Position numbers and translations under genes: made by a program. DNA of 63,187 nt, the filler included, from Sluysia triapertura (taxonomy: Eukaryota): assembly GCA_046118255.1 (NCBI GenBank). It is 4 parts of 4 records of this genome, joined end to end, with 100 filler letters (N's around TTAATTAATTAA, not from the genome) between each part and the next. Parts side by side here need not be neighbours in the genome. Positions count along the whole stretch, not along the records: positions 1 to 15,175 come from JBJNIA010236111.1; 3 more parts are not named here. One strand, given 5' to 3'. Shown in pieces: positions 1-28,333 of this stretch (positions are counted from its first letter, which is position 1; the number at the start of each line of letters is the position of its first letter). The notes beneath the pieces are model-generated. The model was not told the DNA's origin, made no database searches, and worked only from the letters and a program-made list of their open reading frames with translations.

Positions 1-54
1 CTAATTTTAAAGAATAGGATTTTAAATTCAGACTTAAAATCTCATTTTGTTTAA

Positions 55-298
55 CAGACCGTAATACGGCTGTTTTAATTTTTATCTAAAATCAAACTTC
101 GAACTAAGAAGAAATTCTTAAGTTCGTAAAATCCTTATTATTATTATTACATATTGTTTTATTGTAAGAAAAGAATTTTTTGTTAATACACCTTTGAACC
201 TTCTTTGTTAAAATCAATTCTTCTGTGCAATCAGACCGTAAAAAGGCTGATTTAATATTTAAAATATTTTATTTATTTGACAGACCGTAAAAAGGCTG
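55..298 (+). repeat. Three dispersed copies of an 18-nt motif CAGACCGTAA(T/A)A(C/A)GGCTG
   Basis: Copies at 55-72, 232-249 and 281-298. The first folds as CAG(A)CCGT-AAT-ACGGCTG. Confidence 0.75.
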
Positions 299-514
299 TC
301 TCAACCATCATTGCTAGTAACATTATATTTGAATCAAAAACTTAAAAGGAACCTCTTTAAGCTGCACCTTATTACTAGTCAAAACCTATCTTACTTCATT
401 TAAGTCTGATTAGACCGTCGTCCACTAGTGACGTAAATCGTTTTCTAATCAGCCGAACTCATCTCCATACGAACATTTTGTAAGTAGGTTCTGTCTTTGT
501 AAGAACACTTGCAC

Positions 515-545: not shown

Positions 546-911
546 TAATCTTTACATTTATTTACTTTATTCTCATAGTACATTACACTTTACTTACAGA
601 TTTAAAGTAAGATTGTGTTCAGTTTTTAAAGAATCCAAGAGTTTATGCAGTTTAATAACAACAATAACTACAATATTGTTCCTCTTATTATTGTTGTTAT
701 TATACTCAATTTAATCATTTTTAGATTCAAAATATTTTAAGAAGTTTTAAAAAAAGAAAGAAAGATTGTGAAAGTTTAGCAAGAATTTGTGTATTTTTTA
801 AATATTCTTAAATATTTTACATTTAATTAATGTTAATAATAATAGCAACATTATTGTTATTATTATTAACATTAAACTTCATAATGTTATATAACATCAA
901 AAATTGTATCT

Positions 912-1071
912 ACCATCACCAGTACTGACATTGCTCATTAATGTAAATAGATTTATGTCAGCACTGATGGTGGCTTATCATTCAGTTATGCTATTTTGAT
1001 CCTTCATATTAGTTGTCCAATCAATGTTACACTGATTATCAAATTTTACGCTTTCTGATTCGACAACTAAT
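912..1071. ncRNA. Double-hairpin structured element, copy A (unknown function)
   Basis: Stem 1 is 912-931/955-974 with a 23-nt loop. Stem 2 is 1008-1023/1056-1071. Homologous to 28158-28333 with compensatory substitutions. Confidence 0.6.
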
Positions 1072-1196
1072 CAGAATAAACTTATAAAAGTAATTTTTAT
1101 AATTACATAATTAAAATAACCTGTAGAGAACTTAAGTTTCAAAAAATTCTAAAGCGTAAATAATATTGAAAAAGAAGTAAATTAATACCTAACCGA

Positions 1197-2426
1197 ATGG
1201 ATAAAAATTCACAGTGTAATTTTAAACTTAATTCTGAAATTGAATTAATGGTATTATTTCGTCAATCAGTGAATGAAACCAAAAAACTATTTGGAGCACA
1301 GTATGTTTCTGATTGTCAAATATTTGATGTCCTAATGAAATTGTCTTCATTATCAACTGAGAACAGCAGCAAATTATTTAGTTTAATAATTAAACGATGT
1401 TATTCAATCCTCGTACGAAATTCCGGATACATAGTTCCCGTTTTAGAATGGACAAAAAATTGTTTCAAAATTATAGTTTTGAATCATTAGATCTAATGTA
1501 TGCATATAGTAATCATTAATTATTTTTCAAAGAACAAGTTCACTTGCTAATAGCGAACGTTTTAACGTGATATATTATATTTTTCGATGTTCATTTACTT
1601 GTAGAGAATGTGTTTAAAGAGAAAAAAAGAAATAATGCATTAAGTCAAATGAATAATGTGAATGAATCTATGATTTTCTTAATTGATTTTCTGAAAGGCT
1701 ACGGTTGTAATAATGAGAACATCGCCATTTCATTTAACATGTTTATGACTGTTTATCGAAAAAAAATTTAAGTTTGCAACACAAGATAATGTTTTATTAC
1801 ATGTCGTATATTTATTCTTTCTTTTTGCATTTTTTCATAATGAATCAACAATAACGTATTGTGATTATTTACTTTATTTTGTGTTAAATACGAAGGATGA
1901 AATAAATATTCGTAGTTATTCTGCTCATCACATGGCAAGTTATCTCATTCATTTTGACAATGACAATATAACTATTAAGTTTATATTTACAGTGATTGAT
2001 CGAATTTTCAGAGGTGTTCTGAAATTATTAGATTTTTCAAACTTTTTGATTTATAAGACTAACATCACCTATAAAAAGTCAAAAAAAGATAAATTGAATA
2101 AAATTGTTGATTATGGTGATGTTATTAGTGATGATTATACAAACGTTTGTATAAGTATTAGTAGAGGCGACGATAATATCACAACTCATGAATTGTATAA
2201 TATTTGTACAGAACTTACGCAAAAATTATCCAAGCGTAATACAATAAATGTTTTTGCTTTATTAGAAATTTATTTATCCCAAAATAATATCAAAGTCAAT
2301 TATATTAAAATTAAATGCACAGACTCCTTGCAGTTACAAGACCAAAATATAATGGCGCGGACTTTAGAGGTTCTACAGCATCATCATAATGTAATTATTT
2401 CTTTTGTTTACCTTTATGCAACTTAA
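1197..2426 (+). other. Orphan ORF region (97 aa and 181 aa ORFs), possibly one decayed or spliced gene
   Basis: Two ORFs with protein-like composition directly downstream of hairpin copy A. No recognisable domain. Confidence 0.3.
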
Positions 2427-2734
2427 ATTTTCATTTTATTTTAGATGATAATTCTTGGGCAAGGCTGAATAACGCATGCGAAGACATATCAAATAAATTC
2501 AAACCTTTTGTTATAATTAAAAATAAAGAAATTGTTATAGCTATTAATGCTTTTTTGATCCATTTTATTAAATCGTTGATAATAAACCTAAATAAAGTTT
2601 TAAAACATCATATTCGCAACGAACTTAGATTTAATAATATCAATTTTGATTTCAAAAGTAAAAGATTCATAACCATACTAAATTGTTTTCAATTAAAATT
2701 AACATTTCATAATCCAACATTACTACAAACGACT

Positions 2735-3105
2735 TAGACTCACGATGGAAGTCCGCATAGTTTATCGCAGATTATTAATCAGTGTCAGATAAGTTCAAAA
2801 ATTTATGGTTGGAATGAGGCTAAACAATGTGAAAGATTTCCATTACACTTACGAGGTAGAGCTTTAGATGCCTATCATAATGTTTCGGAAGAAAAACGTA
2901 TGGAATGGAATTCGAAAACCAATTAGTTACGAAGGATGCACAATTTACTAATGGTAGAAAATTTCGTAACAGAATACAAGGAACGAATGGATCGATAACT
3001 CAGTATATTTTTGACCTAAAACAGCTAGCGTTAAAAGCCTTTCCAAATTTTAATCACGATCAACGAAATGAACTGATTGTACAATTTGTGAATAAAGTAA
3101 ATTAA
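2735..3105 (+). pseudogene. gag: LTR-retrotransposon Gag (capsid) remnant
   Basis: Manual translation HDGSPHSLSQIINQCQISSKIYGWNEAKQCERFPLHLRGRALDAYH, then after a frameshift RIQGTNGSITQYIFDLKQLALKAFP (major-homology-region-like). Confidence 0.8.
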
Positions 3106-3580: not shown

Positions 3581-5887
3581 TATAATTTGCAGTTCAAAAT
3601 TAATAAATTATACACACATCACGCTCCAGATTCGATTCAACATCAACAATTTTATATGTCTATGCAGCAATCGTAAGATTTGTTTTTATAAGGTTCATCG
3701 TATAATATTTATGATTAATATTCCACTTAATATTTTATTAAATTATAAAGCCAAATATTATATCTGGCTCAATTTTAATTTTTTAAATCAAAGTTCTAAA
3801 ATTAAATGAATACCTTTATTTTAACATATTATTATTATCTCTTCAATTTTTACATATATATTATATATTACTCCGCATAAGGCTAGTTTTATGGTTTCTG
3901 ATATTGAACCAATAGAACGTCATGATATTGAATATATACTTCAGCGTCTGAAATGCTCACATATCTAAAAATAATTTTTCAGTTGACAGCGTTTTGATAG
4001 AAATTCCAATGGTGAACGTAGAAGATCAATAATATCGCCAAAAAGTTTAATAATCAATTTTATAATAACAATACGAATAGGAGAAATAGTAGAACTCGAT
4101 TTATTAATGAAAGTAATTATCGTGGTAATAGATTTATCGAAAATTGTTTTCTTATTTGCACACACGCTTAATCAAAATAAACAAATCATGAATCACACAA
4201 ATAGATGAAATTATAAAAAATACTAAAAAAACAGGACACAATTTTCTGTAAATTTGCAAAGGCTGCTTATTCACTGCTGACGATGACTTAGATTCTATTT
4301 CGTGTCAGAGATGACGGGATCATGTAATATTGAACAATTTGACTCTAACTGAGTTTATTTGCAACATCTCTCATCAGTAAGTAGTGTGATTTTGTAGAGT
4401 CAGAAGTAGTACCTATCAATAAATTATTAGTTGGAGAAAATAAACATAACAAATTAATTAATAAAGTAGAATTTTTGTAAAAACAATTTATTTGTAGTCA
4501 TTTTTTCAAGTTTTTTCACTTGTATATTTATGTTTGTGGCCATAAAAGGTTTGTAAGCTTTCCACAAGTTGTACGTTATAATACACATTGAAAGTATCAC
4601 GAGTATATTCGCGGTTGGCAGCGAATGAGTTAAATAAAGTTTCTCTAACTGAAAATTCGTACTAAGTTCGAAGTTCCTTTATCTTCAAATATTGTTCATC
4701 TTACTTTTACATTTTTGTTTTAATTTATATTCATTATTTATTATTTAGATTTCCGTAAAGTTCTTAATAGCTCCCGCTGTTCGACTTTTTATTATTTTAT
4801 TTTACAAGTTTACAAACCTAAACCAAAACAATCAACAATGTAATTAAATACTCCACAACGATGATTGGACAAAATTTAAACAAATCAAATTAATGTAAAT
4901 TATTACTCTGATGAATAATTAATTAATAAATAATAATAATAATAATCAACGAACTGCTAGACAATATTTATCAATTTATAGTTTTTTTTGATCATATAAA
5001 AATTTGGACCTATGAGCGTAATCAGAAATTTCAATTGATTATTCTGAAAATATAATAATAGTTATTATTATTATCAAATTATGTTATAGTTATGTCAAAT
5101 GTGAGTAAATTAAAAGATAAAAAATTCATACATTATCGCATACTAAGTCGATATGAATGGAACAAATGAAATTGTTATAGTATAGAATTGAGAAAATGAT
5201 TGACTATAATATAATAACAGTGGAAAAATTAAGTTCACATTTTTTGTATAATTATTACTTATTTATTTTAATAAGTAAGTAATATTAAAAGTTTTAATAT
5301 TTTACAATTATTATTTTTATTATTTATTATCTAATTAATTATTAATAAATTATATGATTGAATTGATTTTGATGAATCGATAATAATAAAATTAAAAATT
5401 TAAAACGTATAAACTTTTGAAGTAAGATTGAAATATTTTTTTGACAATTTATTTAAACAAAAATGAAACGCCTTAATTCGACTATCTGAACTGTGTTTCT
5501 AGATCTTATAGATTAGCTTTTAAATTTTATTTTACCAACTTTGAATCATCTTAGAATGTGTTCAGTGAGTTGACGTTTACTGAATTTTAATTGGTTAGAT
5601 AGAAATATAAATATACAAAGAAATGGATAAGAGAGAGGAGTCGAATATATTTATTAAATATATTCACATTGTAAATTTCATAACCAAATAATGTTTTTTA
5701 CAATGCAAATACATTTTTAGTATCAAAATAGAAAAACCAATAATATTTCGATTAATTTATTGGGTAAAATATGCGCAATAACACATTACGACACAACGAT
5801 CATCACACTGTTGAGCGTAACAAAGGCAATCAGTTAGTAGGTCGATCATATCAGGCAGCATGCAGAATCACACACATATAAACCTTA

Positions 5888-7897
5888 TTAAAGAGAATAA
5901 TACGACGATGTGTCTTTGGCTTCTGTATCGTATTCTTCGTCGTTGTCTGAAGACAATATAGAAGACTGATGAGCAAGACTGGTATTAGAAGCAGAACCAC
6001 TGCACAGGGCGTCCAATTGTACTTGAAAATTACTTTGATTGGTTGGAGTTACTATAAGTATTTATAAATGAGCAGAACACGACATTTATAAAGAGTTATC
6101 ATCATCATTTTCATTTTCACTATTATCNNNNNNNNNNNNNNNNNNNNNNNNNNNNNNNNNNNNNNNNNNNNNNNNNNNNNNNNNNNNNNNNNNNNNNNNN
6201 NNNNNNNNNNNNNNNNNNNNNNNNNNNNNNNNNNNNNNNNNNNNNNNNNNNNNNNNNNNNNNNNNNNNNNNNNNNNNNNNNNNNNNNNNNNNNNNNNNNN
6301 NNNNNNNNNNNNNNNNNNNNNNNNNNNNNNNNNNNNNNNTGTGGTGATTAATAGTCTCACAGAATAAAAGCAGATGTGAGTTAACCAACGTATCTAGACT
6401 TACGGATTACGGTTAGACCGTTGGATTTTTAGAAAAACAAAAACGTGAGAAAATTATGGAGGTAAAAATCATGTAATATGGTTTGTATTCCTCCCCCACA
6501 AATGAAATTTCCATTTATTTTTATTAGATCATATTAATAATGTTCTTTATTAAAAAGAACCCGAGGAAGTTTACTTTATTGATAATTAGCAACAATATTA
6601 TACTAAGGTTCACTATCATATAGAACCTAGGAAAATCAATTTTTTAATTTTAAAAGCATTATGCTAATTTATGAAGATTTATTTAAACGGAATCGTTAAA
6701 AATCAATTATATTTTACTGTGGTCATTAAGCGGGACTGAAATAATTAATTAAAATGTTTTAGTAATGACTTTACTAAGGTTCGTTAAAATGAACTTTATT
6801 ACTCAATTATTCACTGATTTTAGCAAAAATTAATATTACCGAAACGATATGTTGAAGTAACTAAAAGAAGTTATACATATGGCTTACAAAATATCAAGGT
6901 AATAATTTGCGAATTTAAAAAGATTATTTTGGATTAATAATCTTATGTAAATAAAGTTTAAAAATATTTTACTAAGTTAACAAATTAAATGTTAACTAAA
7001 AGTTTTATCGTTAAGATTTTACATTGATTTTACTGAGCAATATTAAATTATTGCATAAACTTATGTAAACAAAACTAACGAATTATTAAATCCTTTCCCT
7101 TAATGAATGCATATTAAAGTTCACAAATTATTAAAGTTCATATGGTTATCGACATTATTAATATCATCATCATCACCACCATCATCTCCATTAATATCAC
7201 CACCATCATCATCATTATTAATATTATTATAATTATAATACTAACCAGCATTTTCTTTCTCCGCAACTATGTCAACTTGTTCTTCCAACTCCATCAAGAT
7301 CATATTATTGTCATCTCCTTTTTCTTCTTGCCTTGTTTCAGTAGGATCAATGTCTTCTTTCAAAGATTTCGTTTCACTTTTAATACTGGTACTAATTCGT
7401 CTATTCAAAGTCGATCCATCTTCTAATTCCTCTTCATATTCGTCAACAATCACTGCCACTGTATCATCATTTTTATTATCAACATCAAATCGATCTATTT
7501 CTTCAGATTCCAGTTCACGTGTTGTTCGTTCCATTTCTTGTCGTGTCGTTCGTGTCCTTTCGGTTCTTTTTTTTAATACTCTGCCATCATCCAGTTCTTG
7601 TTCCATTTCTTCCACCTCTCGTTCTACGTCTGGGTCGCATTCATACAACTCCTGGTATACCGGTCGATTGGGTTGTGTATGTGGAGTAGCAGCAGCTTCT
7701 TGATCATAGTCATCTGTGAAAAAGAAAAATTACAATAATCTAGTTAATTTCTAAAACGATTAATTATGACAAAATGTTTAAATTATTTGACAAACCATTT
7801 AAAATGAAATAAGACAATTAAATTAAAAATAATATTTTGAATCAGATAAAATTCATCATAGTTCATAACATAAAAATATCACTTACTTACTGTACAT
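5888..7897 (-). CDS. Three-exon gene model for a ~212-aa acidic low-complexity protein (exons 7897-7891, 7713-7246, 6051-5888)
   Basis: Splice sites ATGTACA|GTAAGT, TTTTTCACAG|AT, GCTG|GTTAGT and CTTATAG|TA, all phase 1. The joined 639-nt frame is open: MYNDYDQEAAATPHTQPNRPVYQELYECDP...ENAVTPTNQSNF...SSYYSL*. The first exon is the least certain, and the N gap in intron 2 could hide an exon. Confidence 0.65.
6376..6430 (-). repeat. Leader-hairpin motif family copy
   Basis: Minus strand reads AAAATCCAACGGTCTAACCGTAATCCGTAAGTCTAGATACGTTGGTTAACTCAC. Confidence 0.7.
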
Positions 7898-10099: not shown

Positions 10100-11462
10100 A
10101 TTACCATGTTATTCATCTAAACTTGCCTCACATTTACTACCTTTCTTTATAATAGTCTGGAAACACTGTAATATCATCTTGTTCATTATCCAATATACTC
10201 GACTCTTCTTTAAAAATAGAAATATCCTTCTCGAATGACTTCTTAAACCCATTTATAATAGAAGAGATTGGGACTAAATCTCAGCTCTCTTTAACCCCGT
10301 TAGAAACTTCTCCATATTATACCCATTTCATTTTCCCGCCTTCGTTCCCATTTTTTCTTAAGGTGTGCTTTAAATGATTTATTAACAGCGATATCAAGAA
10401 GCTGATGTTTCTTTGTTAACCCAGCTGGTATTATGTCAATTTTAGAATAATTTGCTACCACCCTTTTTATTTTATCTGTTATATGGGGTTTGCATGAATC
10501 CACCCTTTTTTCCATCATTACTTCATTTACCCAACATTTTTCATTTGCATCGATAACCACACCAGCGGGAAATTTTTCTTTTGGAATTGTTTTCCGTTTA
10601 AATATAATCATAGGTGGTAATTTTCCTCCATCAGATGTCACTGACAACATAACGGTAAAATTTGATTTTTCATGCACAGATGTTCTAAGAACAACTTCTT
10701 TTGCACCTTTTACGTTAACAGTTCTTGTGGATGGCATATCAAATGCTACAGGGACCTCATCCTTATTACCAATGTGGTAAGGCTCCAAATCTTTAATATT
10801 TTTTGATATAAACAACCTAAGTTTTGTTGCCTTCGCCTCCCAATTCTCAGGAACCATCTGTCCAACTGTTAAAGGCATCCGGATAGACAAACCGTTCCTT
10901 TTCATGAATTTGAATCACCAGCATTGAGATCCAACAAAATCAGTATATCCAAAATCCTCTGCGAGAATTCTCCCTTGATCAAAGACTGACTCAAAGAAAT
11001 TCTATTTCCTTTACTCCTTTCTTCAAATATACATTCTTTAAGGTTATTTTCCAATTTCGGCCATTTAGGAACCTTAAATCTCATTGCTCTAGATTGTCTG
11101 GGTAGTTTTTTAATACATCTTTTCTCAACCCATTGCCTTACACTCTTCTCATCGACATCAAACTTTCTTGTTGCGGCTCGTTTTCCCATTTCAATTACTT
11201 TAATTTTGAACTCAGATGTATATGACTAATTTATAAGGGATATTTAAAATATTATTTTTGTTGAAATGCTATTTTAAATATTATCAAATAATGTTTATGG
11301 TGCGGATTATATATGTGTGCGGGCTATATATGTGTGCGGGCTATATATGTGTGCGGGCTATATATGTGTGCGGGCTATATATGTGTGCGGGTTATATTAA
11401 AAACAGTTTATTTTTATAATGCTGGCTATATATTAAGTGCACATATATACAAGAAAATACGG
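10100..11462 (-). mobile_element. pogo/Tigger DNA transposon, frameshifted transposase, only one TIR seen
   Basis: HTH segment RAATRKFDVDEKSVRQW..KWPKLE and DDE_1 segments IGNKDEVPVAFDMP, TVMLSVTSDGGKLPPMIIFK and QLLDIAVNKSFK. The terminus TA|CCGTATTTTC at 11464-11453 is Tigger-type. Confidence 0.92.
11305..11396. repeat. 17-bp tandem repeat (CTATATATGTGTGCGGG) x5, subterminal repeat of the pogo element
   Basis: Directly visible, between the TIR and the transposase start. Confidence 0.95.
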
Positions 11463-28157: not shown

Positions 28158-28333
28158 ACCGCCATCAATGTTGGTATCACTAATAACTATGTATAAATTT
28201 ACATCAACATTGATGGTGGCTCATCCCTAAATCAATGTACTCCTTTTTAATTACTCTCTATTTTTACTGGTCATCCAACCAGAGCAAAAATAACTGTAGC
28301 TTTCATCTCAATGCCTCTGGTTGGATGACCAAT
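28158..28333. ncRNA. Double-hairpin structured element, copy B
   Basis: Stem 1 is 28158-28177/28201-28220 with a 23-nt loop. Stem 2 has a perfect 17-bp helix TGGTCATCCAACCAGAG/CTCTGGTTGGATGACCA (28268-28284/28315-28331). Confidence 0.65.

What the first reader, a model, noticed from the sequence alone, without database searches (positions are those of the whole stretch)
912..1071. Double hairpin conserved between two distant loci with seven compensatory base-pair changes
Seen in the sequence: 912-1071 and 28158-28333 have the same architecture. Stem 1 arms are ACCATCACCAGTACTGACAT/ATGTCAGCACTGATGGTGGC versus ACCGCCATCAATGTTGGTAT/ACATCAACATTGATGGTGGC, both with exactly 23-nt loops and three paired swaps (G-C>A-T, C-G>T-A twice). 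Stem 2 arms are ATTAGTTGTCCAATCA/TGATTCGACAACTAAT versus ACTGGTCATCCAACCA/TGGTTGGATGACCAAT, with four paired swaps. Loops and spacer have diverged. Each copy sits ~100-125 nt upstream of orphan ORFs. Inference: pairing, not sequence, is being maintained, which suggests an unannotated structured RNA (two-hairpin miRNA/siRNA-like cluster, IRES or packaging signal) or an ssDNA signal of an unknown mobile family.
Basis: partly seen in the sequence, partly recalled or inferred. Interest (0 to 1): 0.78.

Follow-up and report, generated by a model that had tools for sequence, protein, structure and literature searches.

The report
Conserved double hairpin inside a transposon
The two hairpins are real, but they are an internal non-coding part of an abundant, unclassified transposable element whose hairpin arms have stayed complementary through matching substitutions, so this is a mobile-element signal and not a stand-alone RNA gene.

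Summary
Both fold better than shuffled sequence.

They are not a separate locus. They lie inside a dispersed repeat of about 2.6 kb. The window copy spans 599-2729 and lacks its 5' end. Full copies start TGTGG, end ACCAAA and have 5-bp target-site duplications. A 28-nt core of hairpin 2 occurs 101 times in this 619-Mb genome. A decayed orphan reading frame starts 125 nt downstream of hairpin 2.

Across 72-99 copies, variable arm positions sit opposite each other (Spearman 0.81 and 0.68, against -0.42 to 0.30 in shifted registers). Two hairpin-2 pairs rank 4th and 10th of 3741 column pairs for covariation. Sister families with unrelated loops keep the architecture. One core pair exists genome-wide as C-G (939 places), T-A (at least 107) or mixed (188).

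Pairing is therefore maintained in the replicating lineages. RNA versus DNA is undecided: G.U and A.C mismatches are equally common, the arms change at about the neutral rate, and one copy has an inverted loop. There is no Rfam match.

Verdict: a cis-acting transposon module of moderate interest.

The parts
599..2729 (+). One copy of dispersed repeat family 'A', a transposable element. It lacks about 475-500 nt at its 5' end compared with full copies.
   Evidence: BLAST of the window against fetched copies. Full copies start TGTGGTGGTCAACC and end ...TTACCAAA, with 5-bp target-site duplications.
649..706 (.). AT-rich hairpin H-1: arms 649-667 and 688-706.
   Evidence: I5 (19 nt, 95% complementary). 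Folds at -15.9 kcal/mol, z -5.7.
827..875 (.). AT-rich hairpin H0: arms 827-848 and 854-875, built from (TAA)n/(TTA)n-like sequence.
   Evidence: I3 (22 nt, 95% complementary). Folds at -21.4 kcal/mol, z -9.8. Mirroring of arm variability is weaker here (Spearman 0.35, Pearson 0.57).
913..973 (.). Hairpin 1: arms 913-931 and 955-973, loop 932-954 (23 nt). It carries a conserved C.A mismatch at 919/967.
   Evidence: Arm variability is mirrored (Spearman 0.81, p 2e-5). The same mismatch is present in the sister-family copy.
1008..1071 (.). Hairpin 2: arms 1008-1023 and 1056-1071, loop 1024-1055. The window copy has two private defects in the core (A at 1024, C at 1061).
   Evidence: Covarying pairs are 1014/1065 (C-G 34, U-A 28) and 1011/1068, ranked 4th and 10th of 3741 column pairs.
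1016..1024 (+). Near-invariant core of the 5' arm, TCCAAYCAG in the family. It resembles a CCAAT box.
   Evidence: Column frequencies 0.95-1.0. Genome-wide pattern counts.
1055..1063 (+). Near-invariant core of the 3' arm, CTGRTTGGA in the family. This arm was not part of the pattern used to collect copies.
   Evidence: Column frequencies 0.94-1.0.
1197..1490 (+). N-terminal piece of the element's decayed orphan reading frame.
   Evidence: The start codon and its context are conserved among copies.
1881..2426 (+). Middle piece of the same decayed reading frame.
   Evidence: Aligns with open frames of other copies. The longest open frame is 356 codons, at L079:581-1648.
2555..2737 (+). C-terminal piece of the same reading frame, running into the element's 3' end.
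   Evidence: By my reading, the translation resembles the C-terminal stretches of other copies listed.
2640..2729 (+). 3' terminal region, made of a unit of about 47 nt that other copies carry one to three times.
   Evidence: 3' ends of 19 copies compared.

Best explanation
**What it is.** The double hairpin is a conserved non-coding module of a high-copy, apparently non-autonomous transposable element and its sister families.

**Shown**
- It sits at a fixed place inside the element: after two AT-rich hairpins, about 790-960 nt from the true 5' end, and about 125-150 nt before the start of a decayed orphan reading frame.
- All subfamilies keep it. That includes one subfamily whose N-terminal coding segment is different, and a sister family whose loops are unrelated.
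- Arm positions change in a mirrored, complement-preserving way. The reading frame next to it drifted with no sign of protein-level selection.

**Inferred**
- The two arms of each hairpin pair with each other in a single-stranded form of the element.
- That form is most likely the element's transcript.
- The stem-loops, with their near-invariant loop-proximal core TCCAAYCAG/CTGRTTGGA, would then act in cis as a recognition signal for the machinery that copies or moves these elements in trans.
- Lineages that lost pairing stopped amplifying, so only compensated variants founded new subfamilies.
For: **Repeat family and ends**
- 473 first-look candidates; the 39 other matches scored (besides the window's own copy) are 81-93% identical.
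- 101 matches to a 28-nt core, against 0 for the reversed control.
- Sharp 5' ends, and perfect 5-bp duplications in three copies (ATTGT twice, GTGAA once).

**Pairing**
- 85% of cells are paired, against 20-50% in slid registers.
- 91 double-changed cells, against 44 +/- 8 in shuffles and 8-22 in slid registers.
- Two hairpin-2 pairs rank 4th and 10th of 3741 column pairs.
- Variability is mirrored between partner positions: Spearman 0.81 and 0.68, against -0.42 to 0.30 when slid.

**Conservation beyond the family**
- The sister copy L071:3812-3987 has the same three-hairpin layout and scores 88 bits with the covariance model.
- Genome-wide, the core pair is C-G at 939 places, mixed at 188, and T-A at 107 or more. 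All controls gave 0.

**Contrast with the reading frame**
- Differences by codon position are 0.177, 0.177 and 0.169.
- Shared variants by codon position number 43, 51 and 50.

**Module swap**
- A subfamily with a different N-terminal coding segment keeps the hairpins.
Against: **No evidence that the paired strand is RNA**
- I had no expression data.
- G.U-type and A.C-type mismatches are equally common: 58 against 59 in hairpin 1, and 33 against 28 in hairpin 2.
- Hairpin 1 of the window copy folds better on the minus strand (-29.9 against -22.5 kcal/mol).

**Weak or no selection on the arms**
- The arms carry shared variants at about the same density as the neutral reading frame (0.125-0.13 against 0.121). 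Strong selection for pairing would lower that rate. Conversion between arms would not.
- Several subfamily consensus sequences carry uncompensated mismatches.

**Other points**
- Only two pairs are clear covariation outliers. Some non-paired columns covary as strongly through shared ancestry.
- One copy (L098) has the hairpin-2 loop inverted, a DNA-level event between the arms.
- The element's class and its mobilising enzyme are unknown.
Confidence: 0.45

Rival explanations
1. DNA-level regulatory module. Each arm pair is two inverted binding sites for the same protein, either a host factor or an element-encoded or partner protein. The module lies in the promoter region upstream of the element's reading frame. 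The arms change together because both sites must fit the same protein, and no nucleic-acid pairing is needed.
For: - The loop-proximal core is nearly invariant in sequence, not only in pairing.
- In family A the core reads as a CCAAT box on both arms (CCAATCAG and CTGATTGG).
- It lies about 125-190 nt upstream of a conserved start codon, with a conserved AT-rich TATA-like block in between.
- There is no G.U preference on either strand.
Against: - Genome-wide, the commonest form of the core is CCAAC/GTTGG (939 places). That is not a CCAAT box.
- The outer arm positions differ between families yet stay complementary within each family. A fixed host factor does not explain this.
- The reading frame it would drive shows no purifying selection.
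Confidence: 0.2
2. Palindromes with no function, kept complementary by a mutational process: templated correction or conversion between the arms during replication or reverse transcription of the active copies. They persist because they are part of a successful element.
For: - The arms carry shared variants at the neutral density but in mirrored pairs. This is what unbiased arm-to-arm conversion predicts.
- A transversion pair, A-T to T-A at 1011/1068, goes through a surviving A.A intermediate subfamily.
- One copy has its loop inverted between the arms, which shows that the arms interact in DNA.
Against: - The same two hairpins, in the same order and spacing, survive in a sister family with unrelated loops, together with a conserved C.A mismatch that conversion should erase.
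- Private complement-restoring doubles in dead copies are about as few as chance predicts. I counted about 4-5 in the table, against about 3 expected by my rough estimate.
Confidence: 0.2
3. Hairpins that generate small RNAs. Transcripts through the module fold and are diced into miRNA-like or siRNA-like RNAs, either by the host as a defence or to the element's benefit.
For: A brown planthopper study reports an 11-member 'novel miRNA family'. Its precursors are multi-copy hairpins with CCAATCAG on one arm and CTGATTGG on the other (PMC3295781). This is an analogy from another organism.
Against: - Stems of 17-19 bp with 23-45-nt loops are poor Dicer or Drosha substrates by the usual criteria (my own knowledge).
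- No small-RNA data were available.
- There is no Rfam miRNA match.
- The shared core is only 8-10 nt and could be coincidence.
Confidence: 0.1
4. A free-standing, single-copy or low-copy structured non-coding RNA gene conserved between two loci.
For: Stable folds.
Against: - The segment is part of a repeat with hundreds of copies.
- Its similarity to other copies runs without a break into the flanks from about 599 to 2729.
- There is no Rfam family match.
Confidence: 0.02

Closest known systems
Cis-acting stem-loops of retroelement RNAs, such as the packaging and dimerisation hairpins in LTR-retrotransposon and retroviral leaders, and the two adjacent hairpins of the HIV-1 R region (from my own knowledge)
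   Same: - Adjacent stem-loops in non-coding sequence upstream of the first reading frame.
- Kept across diverged lineages by compensatory change.
- Needed in cis, while proteins can be supplied in trans.
- A target-site duplication of integrase type (5 bp) and a 5' end that starts TG.
   Different: - No LTR pair, primer-binding site, polypurine tract, gag, reverse transcriptase or integrase was found.
- The 3' end is AA, not CA.
- Stems are longer (17-19 bp) and loops larger than in typical packaging hairpins.
- An RNA nature is not shown.
Solo LTR of an LTR retrotransposon
   Same: - Starts TGTGG.
- 5-bp target-site duplication.
- Sharp ends on both sides.
- Unique flanks.
- Carries promoter-like motifs (a CCAAT-like core and a TATA-like block).
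   Different: - Ends ...ACCAAA.
- About 2.6 kb long, with a reading frame of about 550 codons inside it.
- None of 13 distinct copies is next to a shared internal region.
Foldback elements, MITEs and quasi-palindromes maintained by templated mutation
   Same: - Hairpin-forming inverted repeats within mobile DNA.
- Complement-restoring changes.
- One loop inversion between the arms.
   Different: - The inverted repeats are internal and short. They are not the element's termini.
- The termini share only about 5 nt in inverted orientation (TGTGG against TTTGG).
- The element is far larger than a MITE.
Brown planthopper 'novel miRNA family' bph-m0002 and related members (PMC3295781)
   Same: Multi-copy hairpins whose arms carry CCAATCAG(AG) and (CT)CTGATTGG.
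   Different: - A different organism.
- Longer stems with shorter loops.
- Outer arm sequences are unrelated.
- Homology is not shown.
Paired CCAAT boxes (NF-Y sites) in promoters
   Same: - Family A arms read CCAATCAG and CTGATTGG, the textbook optimum by my own knowledge.
- They sit at promoter-like distances from a TATA-like block and a start codon.
   Different: - Most related modules in this genome read CCAAC/GTTGG.
- The flanks covary between the arms.

Membership tests
Any described RNA family (Rfam 15) | A match to a curated covariance model | tested here: not met
   No match at E <= 1 in or near 912-1071. No match anywhere in a full copy plus the sister copy, L071.
Animal-type pre-miRNA cluster | A stem of about 22 bp or more with a small terminal loop | tested here: not met
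   Stems are 17-19 bp with loops of 23-45 nt. The size criterion comes from my own knowledge.
Animal-type pre-miRNA cluster | Discrete 20-24-nt reads from one arm | not testable with these tools
   No small-RNA data were available.
LTR retrotransposon (solo LTR) | TG...CA termini | tested here: not met
   The 5' end is TGTGG in 22 of 24 locus rows listed. The 3' end is ...TTAC[CT]AAA, so it ends AA.
LTR retrotransposon (solo LTR) | Target-site duplication of 4-6 bp | tested here: met
   Perfect 5-bp duplications in L070 and L071 (ATTGT) and L083 (GTGAA). L072 and L074 match at 4 of 5 positions.
LTR retrotransposon (solo LTR) | Some copies occur as pairs flanking a gag-pol interior with a primer-binding site and a polypurine tract | tested here: inconclusive
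   All 13 distinct copies have unique flanks on both sides. Contigs are short, and no more genome sequence could be fetched.
MITE or foldback element | Terminal inverted repeats, and small size for a MITE | tested here: not met
   No terminal inverted repeat beyond about 5 nt. The element is about 2.6 kb.
Helitron | 5' TC and 3' CTRR ends, no target-site duplication, hairpin next to the 3' end | tested here: not met
   The ends are TGTGG and ACCAAA, a 5-bp duplication is present, and the hairpins lie about 800-950 nt from the 5' end.
Non-LTR retrotransposon or SINE | Variable 5' truncation, duplications of variable length, and a 3' A-tail or simple repeat | tested here: not met
   Sharp common 5' end in 24 locus rows listed, fixed 5-bp duplications, and no A-tail.
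Autonomous transposon of a known superfamily | Encodes a recognisable transposase, integrase, reverse transcriptase or Rep protein | tested here: not met
   - No Pfam family reached its curated cut-off.
- No hit in the word-indexed protein search.
- No hit for a profile search of 1.84 billion representative proteins.
- The structure model has low confidence (pLDDT 47) and is all-helical.
Paired NF-Y CCAAT boxes | An invariant CCAAT pentamer on both arms | tested here: not met
   Met within family A. Across the related modules it fails: 939 places read CCAAC/GTTGG, against 107 or more that read CCAAT/ATTGG.

The most novel reading that the evidence does not exclude
These elements form a lineage-specific transposon superfamily with no recognisable enzyme, no LTRs and no terminal inverted repeats. 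Its copying depends on a conserved internal double stem-loop with a fixed core (TCCAAYCAG/CTGRTTGGA), read in a single-stranded intermediate by an as yet unidentified partner. That would be a new kind of cis signal, and possibly a new mobilisation route giving 5-bp duplications.
Probability: 0.15. Interest if true: 0.65.

Novelty: new member of a known kind. Interest (0 to 1): 0.35.

Why it matters
- The finding changes from 'a possible new structured RNA gene' to 'a conserved structural module of an abundant transposon superfamily'.
- This matters mainly for annotation. More than 1,200 places in this genome carry the hairpin-2 type module and should be masked as repeat-derived. They should not be called as RNA genes or miRNAs.
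- There is a modest open question. The element has integrase-like 5-bp duplications but no known enzyme, LTR or terminal inverted repeat. Its only feature that shows coupled evolution is this hairpin pair.
- If the hairpins prove to be the recognition signal, they would be a handle for finding the autonomous partner and its mechanism.

Tried and rejected
1. **NF-Y / CCAAT-box pair as the general explanation.** It looked attractive for family A. I downgraded it when the CCAAC/GTTGG form turned out about nine times more common.
2. **Deletion derivatives.** I first read copies that match 599-1086 plus 2388-2713 as deletion derivatives that keep the hairpins. That was wrong. They carry 1.1-1.2 kb of different sequence with other reading-frame pieces (subfamily A2).
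3. **Primer-binding-site or tRNA 3'-end reading of the 3' arm (TGGTTGGA...).** The implied tRNA acceptor would begin with T, and family A lacks the CCA. No tRNA was found. Dropped.
4. **Homology across organisms.**
   - The metagenome scan gave 84 hits. By my estimate about half or more are expected by chance.
   - The one real cluster, about 29 contigs named Ga0157362-67, is a palindromic element of about 180 bp from another AT-rich eukaryote.
   - The viral scan gave 2 hits on GC-rich contigs.
   - I treat all of these as coincidence or analogy.
5. **Using conservation level as evidence of selection.** The arms are less variable than the spacers. But the copies were chosen by similarity to this very region. 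With the reading frame as a neutral yardstick, the density of shared variants is the same.
6. **Identifying the reading frame.** Pfam, the word-indexed search, the profile search, the protein atlas (weak helical-repeat look-alikes) and a structure model (pLDDT 47, so not used for fold search) all left it unexplained.
7. **Covariance-model search of the whole genome.** It failed twice on the server.
8. **Other limits.**

Full report
**1. The observation**

Both inverted repeats are at the stated coordinates.
- Hairpin 1 has arms 913-931 and 955-973, 19 nt, 84% complementary, with exactly 23 nt between them.
- Hairpin 2 has arms 1003-1023 and 1056-1076, 86% complementary.
- In 72 copies only 1008-1023 with 1056-1071 stays paired. 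The outer five pairs are paired in only about a third of cells.
- As RNA, hairpin 1 folds at -22.5 kcal/mol (z -3.9) and hairpin 2 at -16.5 (z -4.6) against dinucleotide shuffles.
- Two more AT-rich hairpins lie just upstream, at 645-710 (z -5.7) and 822-880 (z -9.8).
- The reading frame 125 nt downstream starts at 1197.

**2. What the hairpins sit in**

*The genome.* The window belongs to a 619-Mb genome in 263,945 contigs. It has about 25% G+C, so I take it for a eukaryote.

*The repeat family.*
- The 181 nt around the hairpins found 473 first-look candidates. The 39 other matches scored (besides the window's own copy) are 81-93% identical.
- A 28-nt core of hairpin 2 occurs 101 times at up to 3 mismatches, and 0 times for the reversed control.
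- Similarity to other copies runs without a break from about 599 to about 2729.
- The window copy lacks its 5' end. Other copies extend a further 475-500 nt.

*Ends and insertion sites.*
- Full copies have a sharp common start, TGTGGTGGTCAACC, seen in 24 locus rows.
- They end ...TTAC[CT]AAA after one to three units of about 47 nt.
- Flanks are unique on both sides in 13 distinct copies.
- 5-bp target-site duplications are perfect in L070 and L071 (ATTGT) and in L083 (GTGAA). L072 and L074 are one base off.
- There are no LTRs and no terminal inverted repeats beyond about 5 nt.

*Neighbours in the window.* The sequence on either side belongs to other repeat families: 1-513, 2734-3093, 3860-4137 and 4147-4600.

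**3. The reading frame**

- From 1197 to about 2700 the element carries the remains of one long frame.
- The longest open stretch is 356 codons (L079:581-1648). By my own estimate that is extremely improbable by chance at 25% G+C.
- No Pfam family reached its curated cut-off.
- It has no relative in the word-indexed search.
- It has no hit for a 15-sequence profile against 1.84 billion representative proteins.
- The protein atlas gave only weak helical-repeat look-alikes.
- The structure model has low confidence and is all-helical (pLDDT 47).
- Among copies, differences are equal at the three codon positions (0.177, 0.177, 0.169). So are variants shared by three or more copies (43, 51, 50).
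- The protein was therefore not under selection while the family diversified, and the element behaves as non-autonomous.
- A second subfamily (L017, L082, L083) shares the 5' region with the hairpins, the C-terminal part and the 3' end. It has a different segment of 1.1-1.2 kb in place of window 1087-2387.

**4. Is pairing maintained?**

*Alignment of 72 copies (A1).*
- 85% of stem cells form standard pairs, against 20-50% when the 3' partner is slid by 1-3 columns.
- 91 cells carry a change on both sides, against 44 +/- 8 in shuffles (0 of 500 reach it) and 8-22 in slid registers.

*Main covarying pairs.*

| Pair (window coordinates) | States observed |
|---|---|
| 1014/1065 | C-G 34, U-A 28, U-G 5, other 4 |
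| 1011/1068 | A-U 46, U-A 11, G-C 4 |
| 924/962 | A-U 23, G-C 18, G-U 8, unpaired 20 |
| 922/964 | partly covarying |
| 925/961 | partly covarying |

*Control for shared ancestry.*
- I ranked corrected mutual information over all 3741 pairs of variable columns.
- The two hairpin-2 pairs rank 4th and 10th.
- The hairpin-1 pairs are not outliers, and some unpaired columns covary as strongly.

*Mirrored variability.* This is the cleanest statistic.
- The per-site variability of a 5' arm position predicts that of its partner.
- Hairpin 1: Spearman 0.81, p 2e-5.
- Hairpin 2: Spearman 0.68, Pearson 0.96.
- In registers slid by 1-3 nt the values are -0.42 to 0.30.

*Subfamily consensus sequences.* They show perfect compensated variants of hairpin 2 (AGTCGT/ACGACT, AGTTGT/ACAACT, TGTTGT/ACAACA). 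They also show surviving intermediates with a mismatch or a wobble pair.

**5. Beyond the family**

- The covariance model built from A1 found a second full-length match on locus L071, directly downstream of a family-A copy and on the same strand. It scores 88 bits, E 1.3e-15.
- That sister element has the same layout:
  - an AT-rich palindrome at 3715-3778;
  - a hairpin-1 equivalent at 3819-3835 with 3864-3880;
  - a hairpin-2 equivalent at 3917-3933 with 3960-3976.
- Its spacing is similar, but its loops are different.
- By my reading it shares the C.A mismatch of hairpin 1. It shows one double change in hairpin 1 and two in hairpin 2 relative to family A.
- Genome-wide pattern counts, all with 0 matches in controls:

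| Pattern (25-45 nt between the arms) | Places |
|---|---|
| ATT-N6-CCAATCAG ... CTGATTGG-N6-AAT | 107 |
| TCCAACCAG ... CTGGTTGGA | 939 |
| Mixed form, TCCAACCAG ... CTGATTGGA | 90 + 98 |

- The 107 places include families with unrelated loops whose free arm positions are again largely complementary (for example GGTCAT/ATGACC and GGACAT/ATGTCC).
- The 939 places carry many unrelated loops.
- The Y/R position of the core is thus itself a compensated pair. The odds ratio is at least about 11, by my arithmetic and not corrected for ancestry.
- More than 1,200 places in the genome carry this module.

**6. RNA or DNA?**

Nothing here decides it.
- G.U-type and A.C-type non-standard pairs are equally common: 58 against 59 in hairpin 1 without its two fixed sites, and 33 against 28 in hairpin 2. 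Paired fractions are 91% for the plus strand and 92% for the minus strand.
- The window's hairpin 1 folds better on the minus strand (-29.9 kcal/mol, z -6.6).
- In 14 copies that cover both regions, the arms carry shared variants at the same density as the neutral reading frame (0.13 and 0.125 against 0.121). This fits weak selection or arm-to-arm conversion better than strong selection.
- In copy L098 the loop of hairpin 2 is reverse-complemented while its flanks are not. That is a DNA-level event between the arms.
- Against pure conversion:
  - the mismatch in hairpin 1 is conserved across families;
  - private complement-restoring doubles in dead copies are about as few as chance predicts (my count).
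- The arms are less variable than the spacers. That comparison is biased, because I collected copies by similarity to this region.

**7. Comparison with known things**

- There is no Rfam match and no tRNA.
- The stems are too short and the loops too long for typical animal pre-miRNAs.
- The element fails the defining features of MITEs, Helitrons and non-LTR elements.
- It meets only part of the solo-LTR definition: the TG start and the 5-bp duplication, but not the CA end, and no interior was found.
- In family A the core reads as a pair of inverted CCAAT boxes at promoter-like distance from a conserved AT-rich block and the start codon. The commoner CCAAC form elsewhere argues against that as the general function.
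- A planthopper paper lists a multi-copy 'miRNA family' whose hairpin arms carry the same 8-10-nt core (PMC3295781).
- Metagenome contigs from another AT-rich eukaryote hold a palindromic element of about 180 bp with the same 10-mer.
- Both may be coincidence, and I treat them as analogies only.

**8. Verdict**

- The 'new structured RNA' part is unproven.
- Most likely this is a cis-acting stem-loop module of a non-autonomous transposon superfamily, kept complementary in the lineages that went on amplifying.
- Whether it works as RNA, as single-stranded DNA or as paired protein sites needs expression data and a wider, phylogeny-aware covariation test.

Noticed in passing
L098 (G000:C40557:1999-2406), hairpin 2: The loop of hairpin 2 is reverse-complemented relative to every other copy, while hairpin 1 and the flanks keep their orientation. 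This is an inversion between the two arms.
   Followed up: partly
L071:3139-4001: A sister-family element with the same three-hairpin layout lies directly after a family-A copy. The A copy's 5-bp duplication (ATTGT) overlaps what looks like the sister's own TGTG start. The A copy therefore seems to have inserted about 3 nt inside the sister's 5' end. Three of 13 A copies have ATTGT as their 5' flank.
   Followed up: partly
window 1-513: A different high-copy repeat (1519 first-look candidates) that ends at 513. It carries the 18-nt motif CAGACCGTA..GGCTG three times, at 55-72, 232-249 and 281-298.
   Followed up: no
window 2734-3093, 3860-4137 and 4147-4600: Further repeat families directly downstream of the element. 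The last has 3354 first-look candidates. A 66-codon frame at 2905-3105 looked gag-like to me but has no Pfam match.
   Followed up: partly
window 10303-11189 (-): Remnant of a pogo/Tc5-type DNA transposon. It matches DDE_1 at E 7.6e-9, with a weak helix-turn-helix match upstream.
   Followed up: partly
window 11283-11414: A tandem array of about six copies of a 17-nt unit (GTGCGGGCTATATATGT).
   Followed up: no
window 6128-6339: A run of N (assembly gap or masked). I left it alone.
   Followed up: no
window 7241-7648 (-): A 135-codon open frame rich in acidic residues, in a stretch with strongly negative GC skew. No convincing Pfam match. It may be an exon of a host gene.
   Followed up: no
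L017, L082, L083 (subfamily A2): A subfamily shares the 5' region with the hairpins, the C-terminal coding part and the 3' end of family A. It has an unrelated segment of 1.1-1.2 kb with its own open frames in place of window 1087-2387, so the element is modular.
   Followed up: partly
L158-L235, contigs named Ga0157362 to Ga0157367: About 29 metagenome contigs (G+C about 0.3) from another eukaryote carry a palindromic repeat of about 180 bp. Its centre holds GTCCAATCAGAGCTCTG and its complement. It also shows a compensated T-A/C-G pair just outside the core.
   Followed up: partly
L071:547-800 used as query on G000: The first 250 nt of the element gave 2009 first-look candidates, with top hits 88-93% identical. 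The hairpin region gave 473 and the 3' end 174. Either the 5' end is shared with other families, or the L071 type is a younger and larger subfamily.
   Followed up: no
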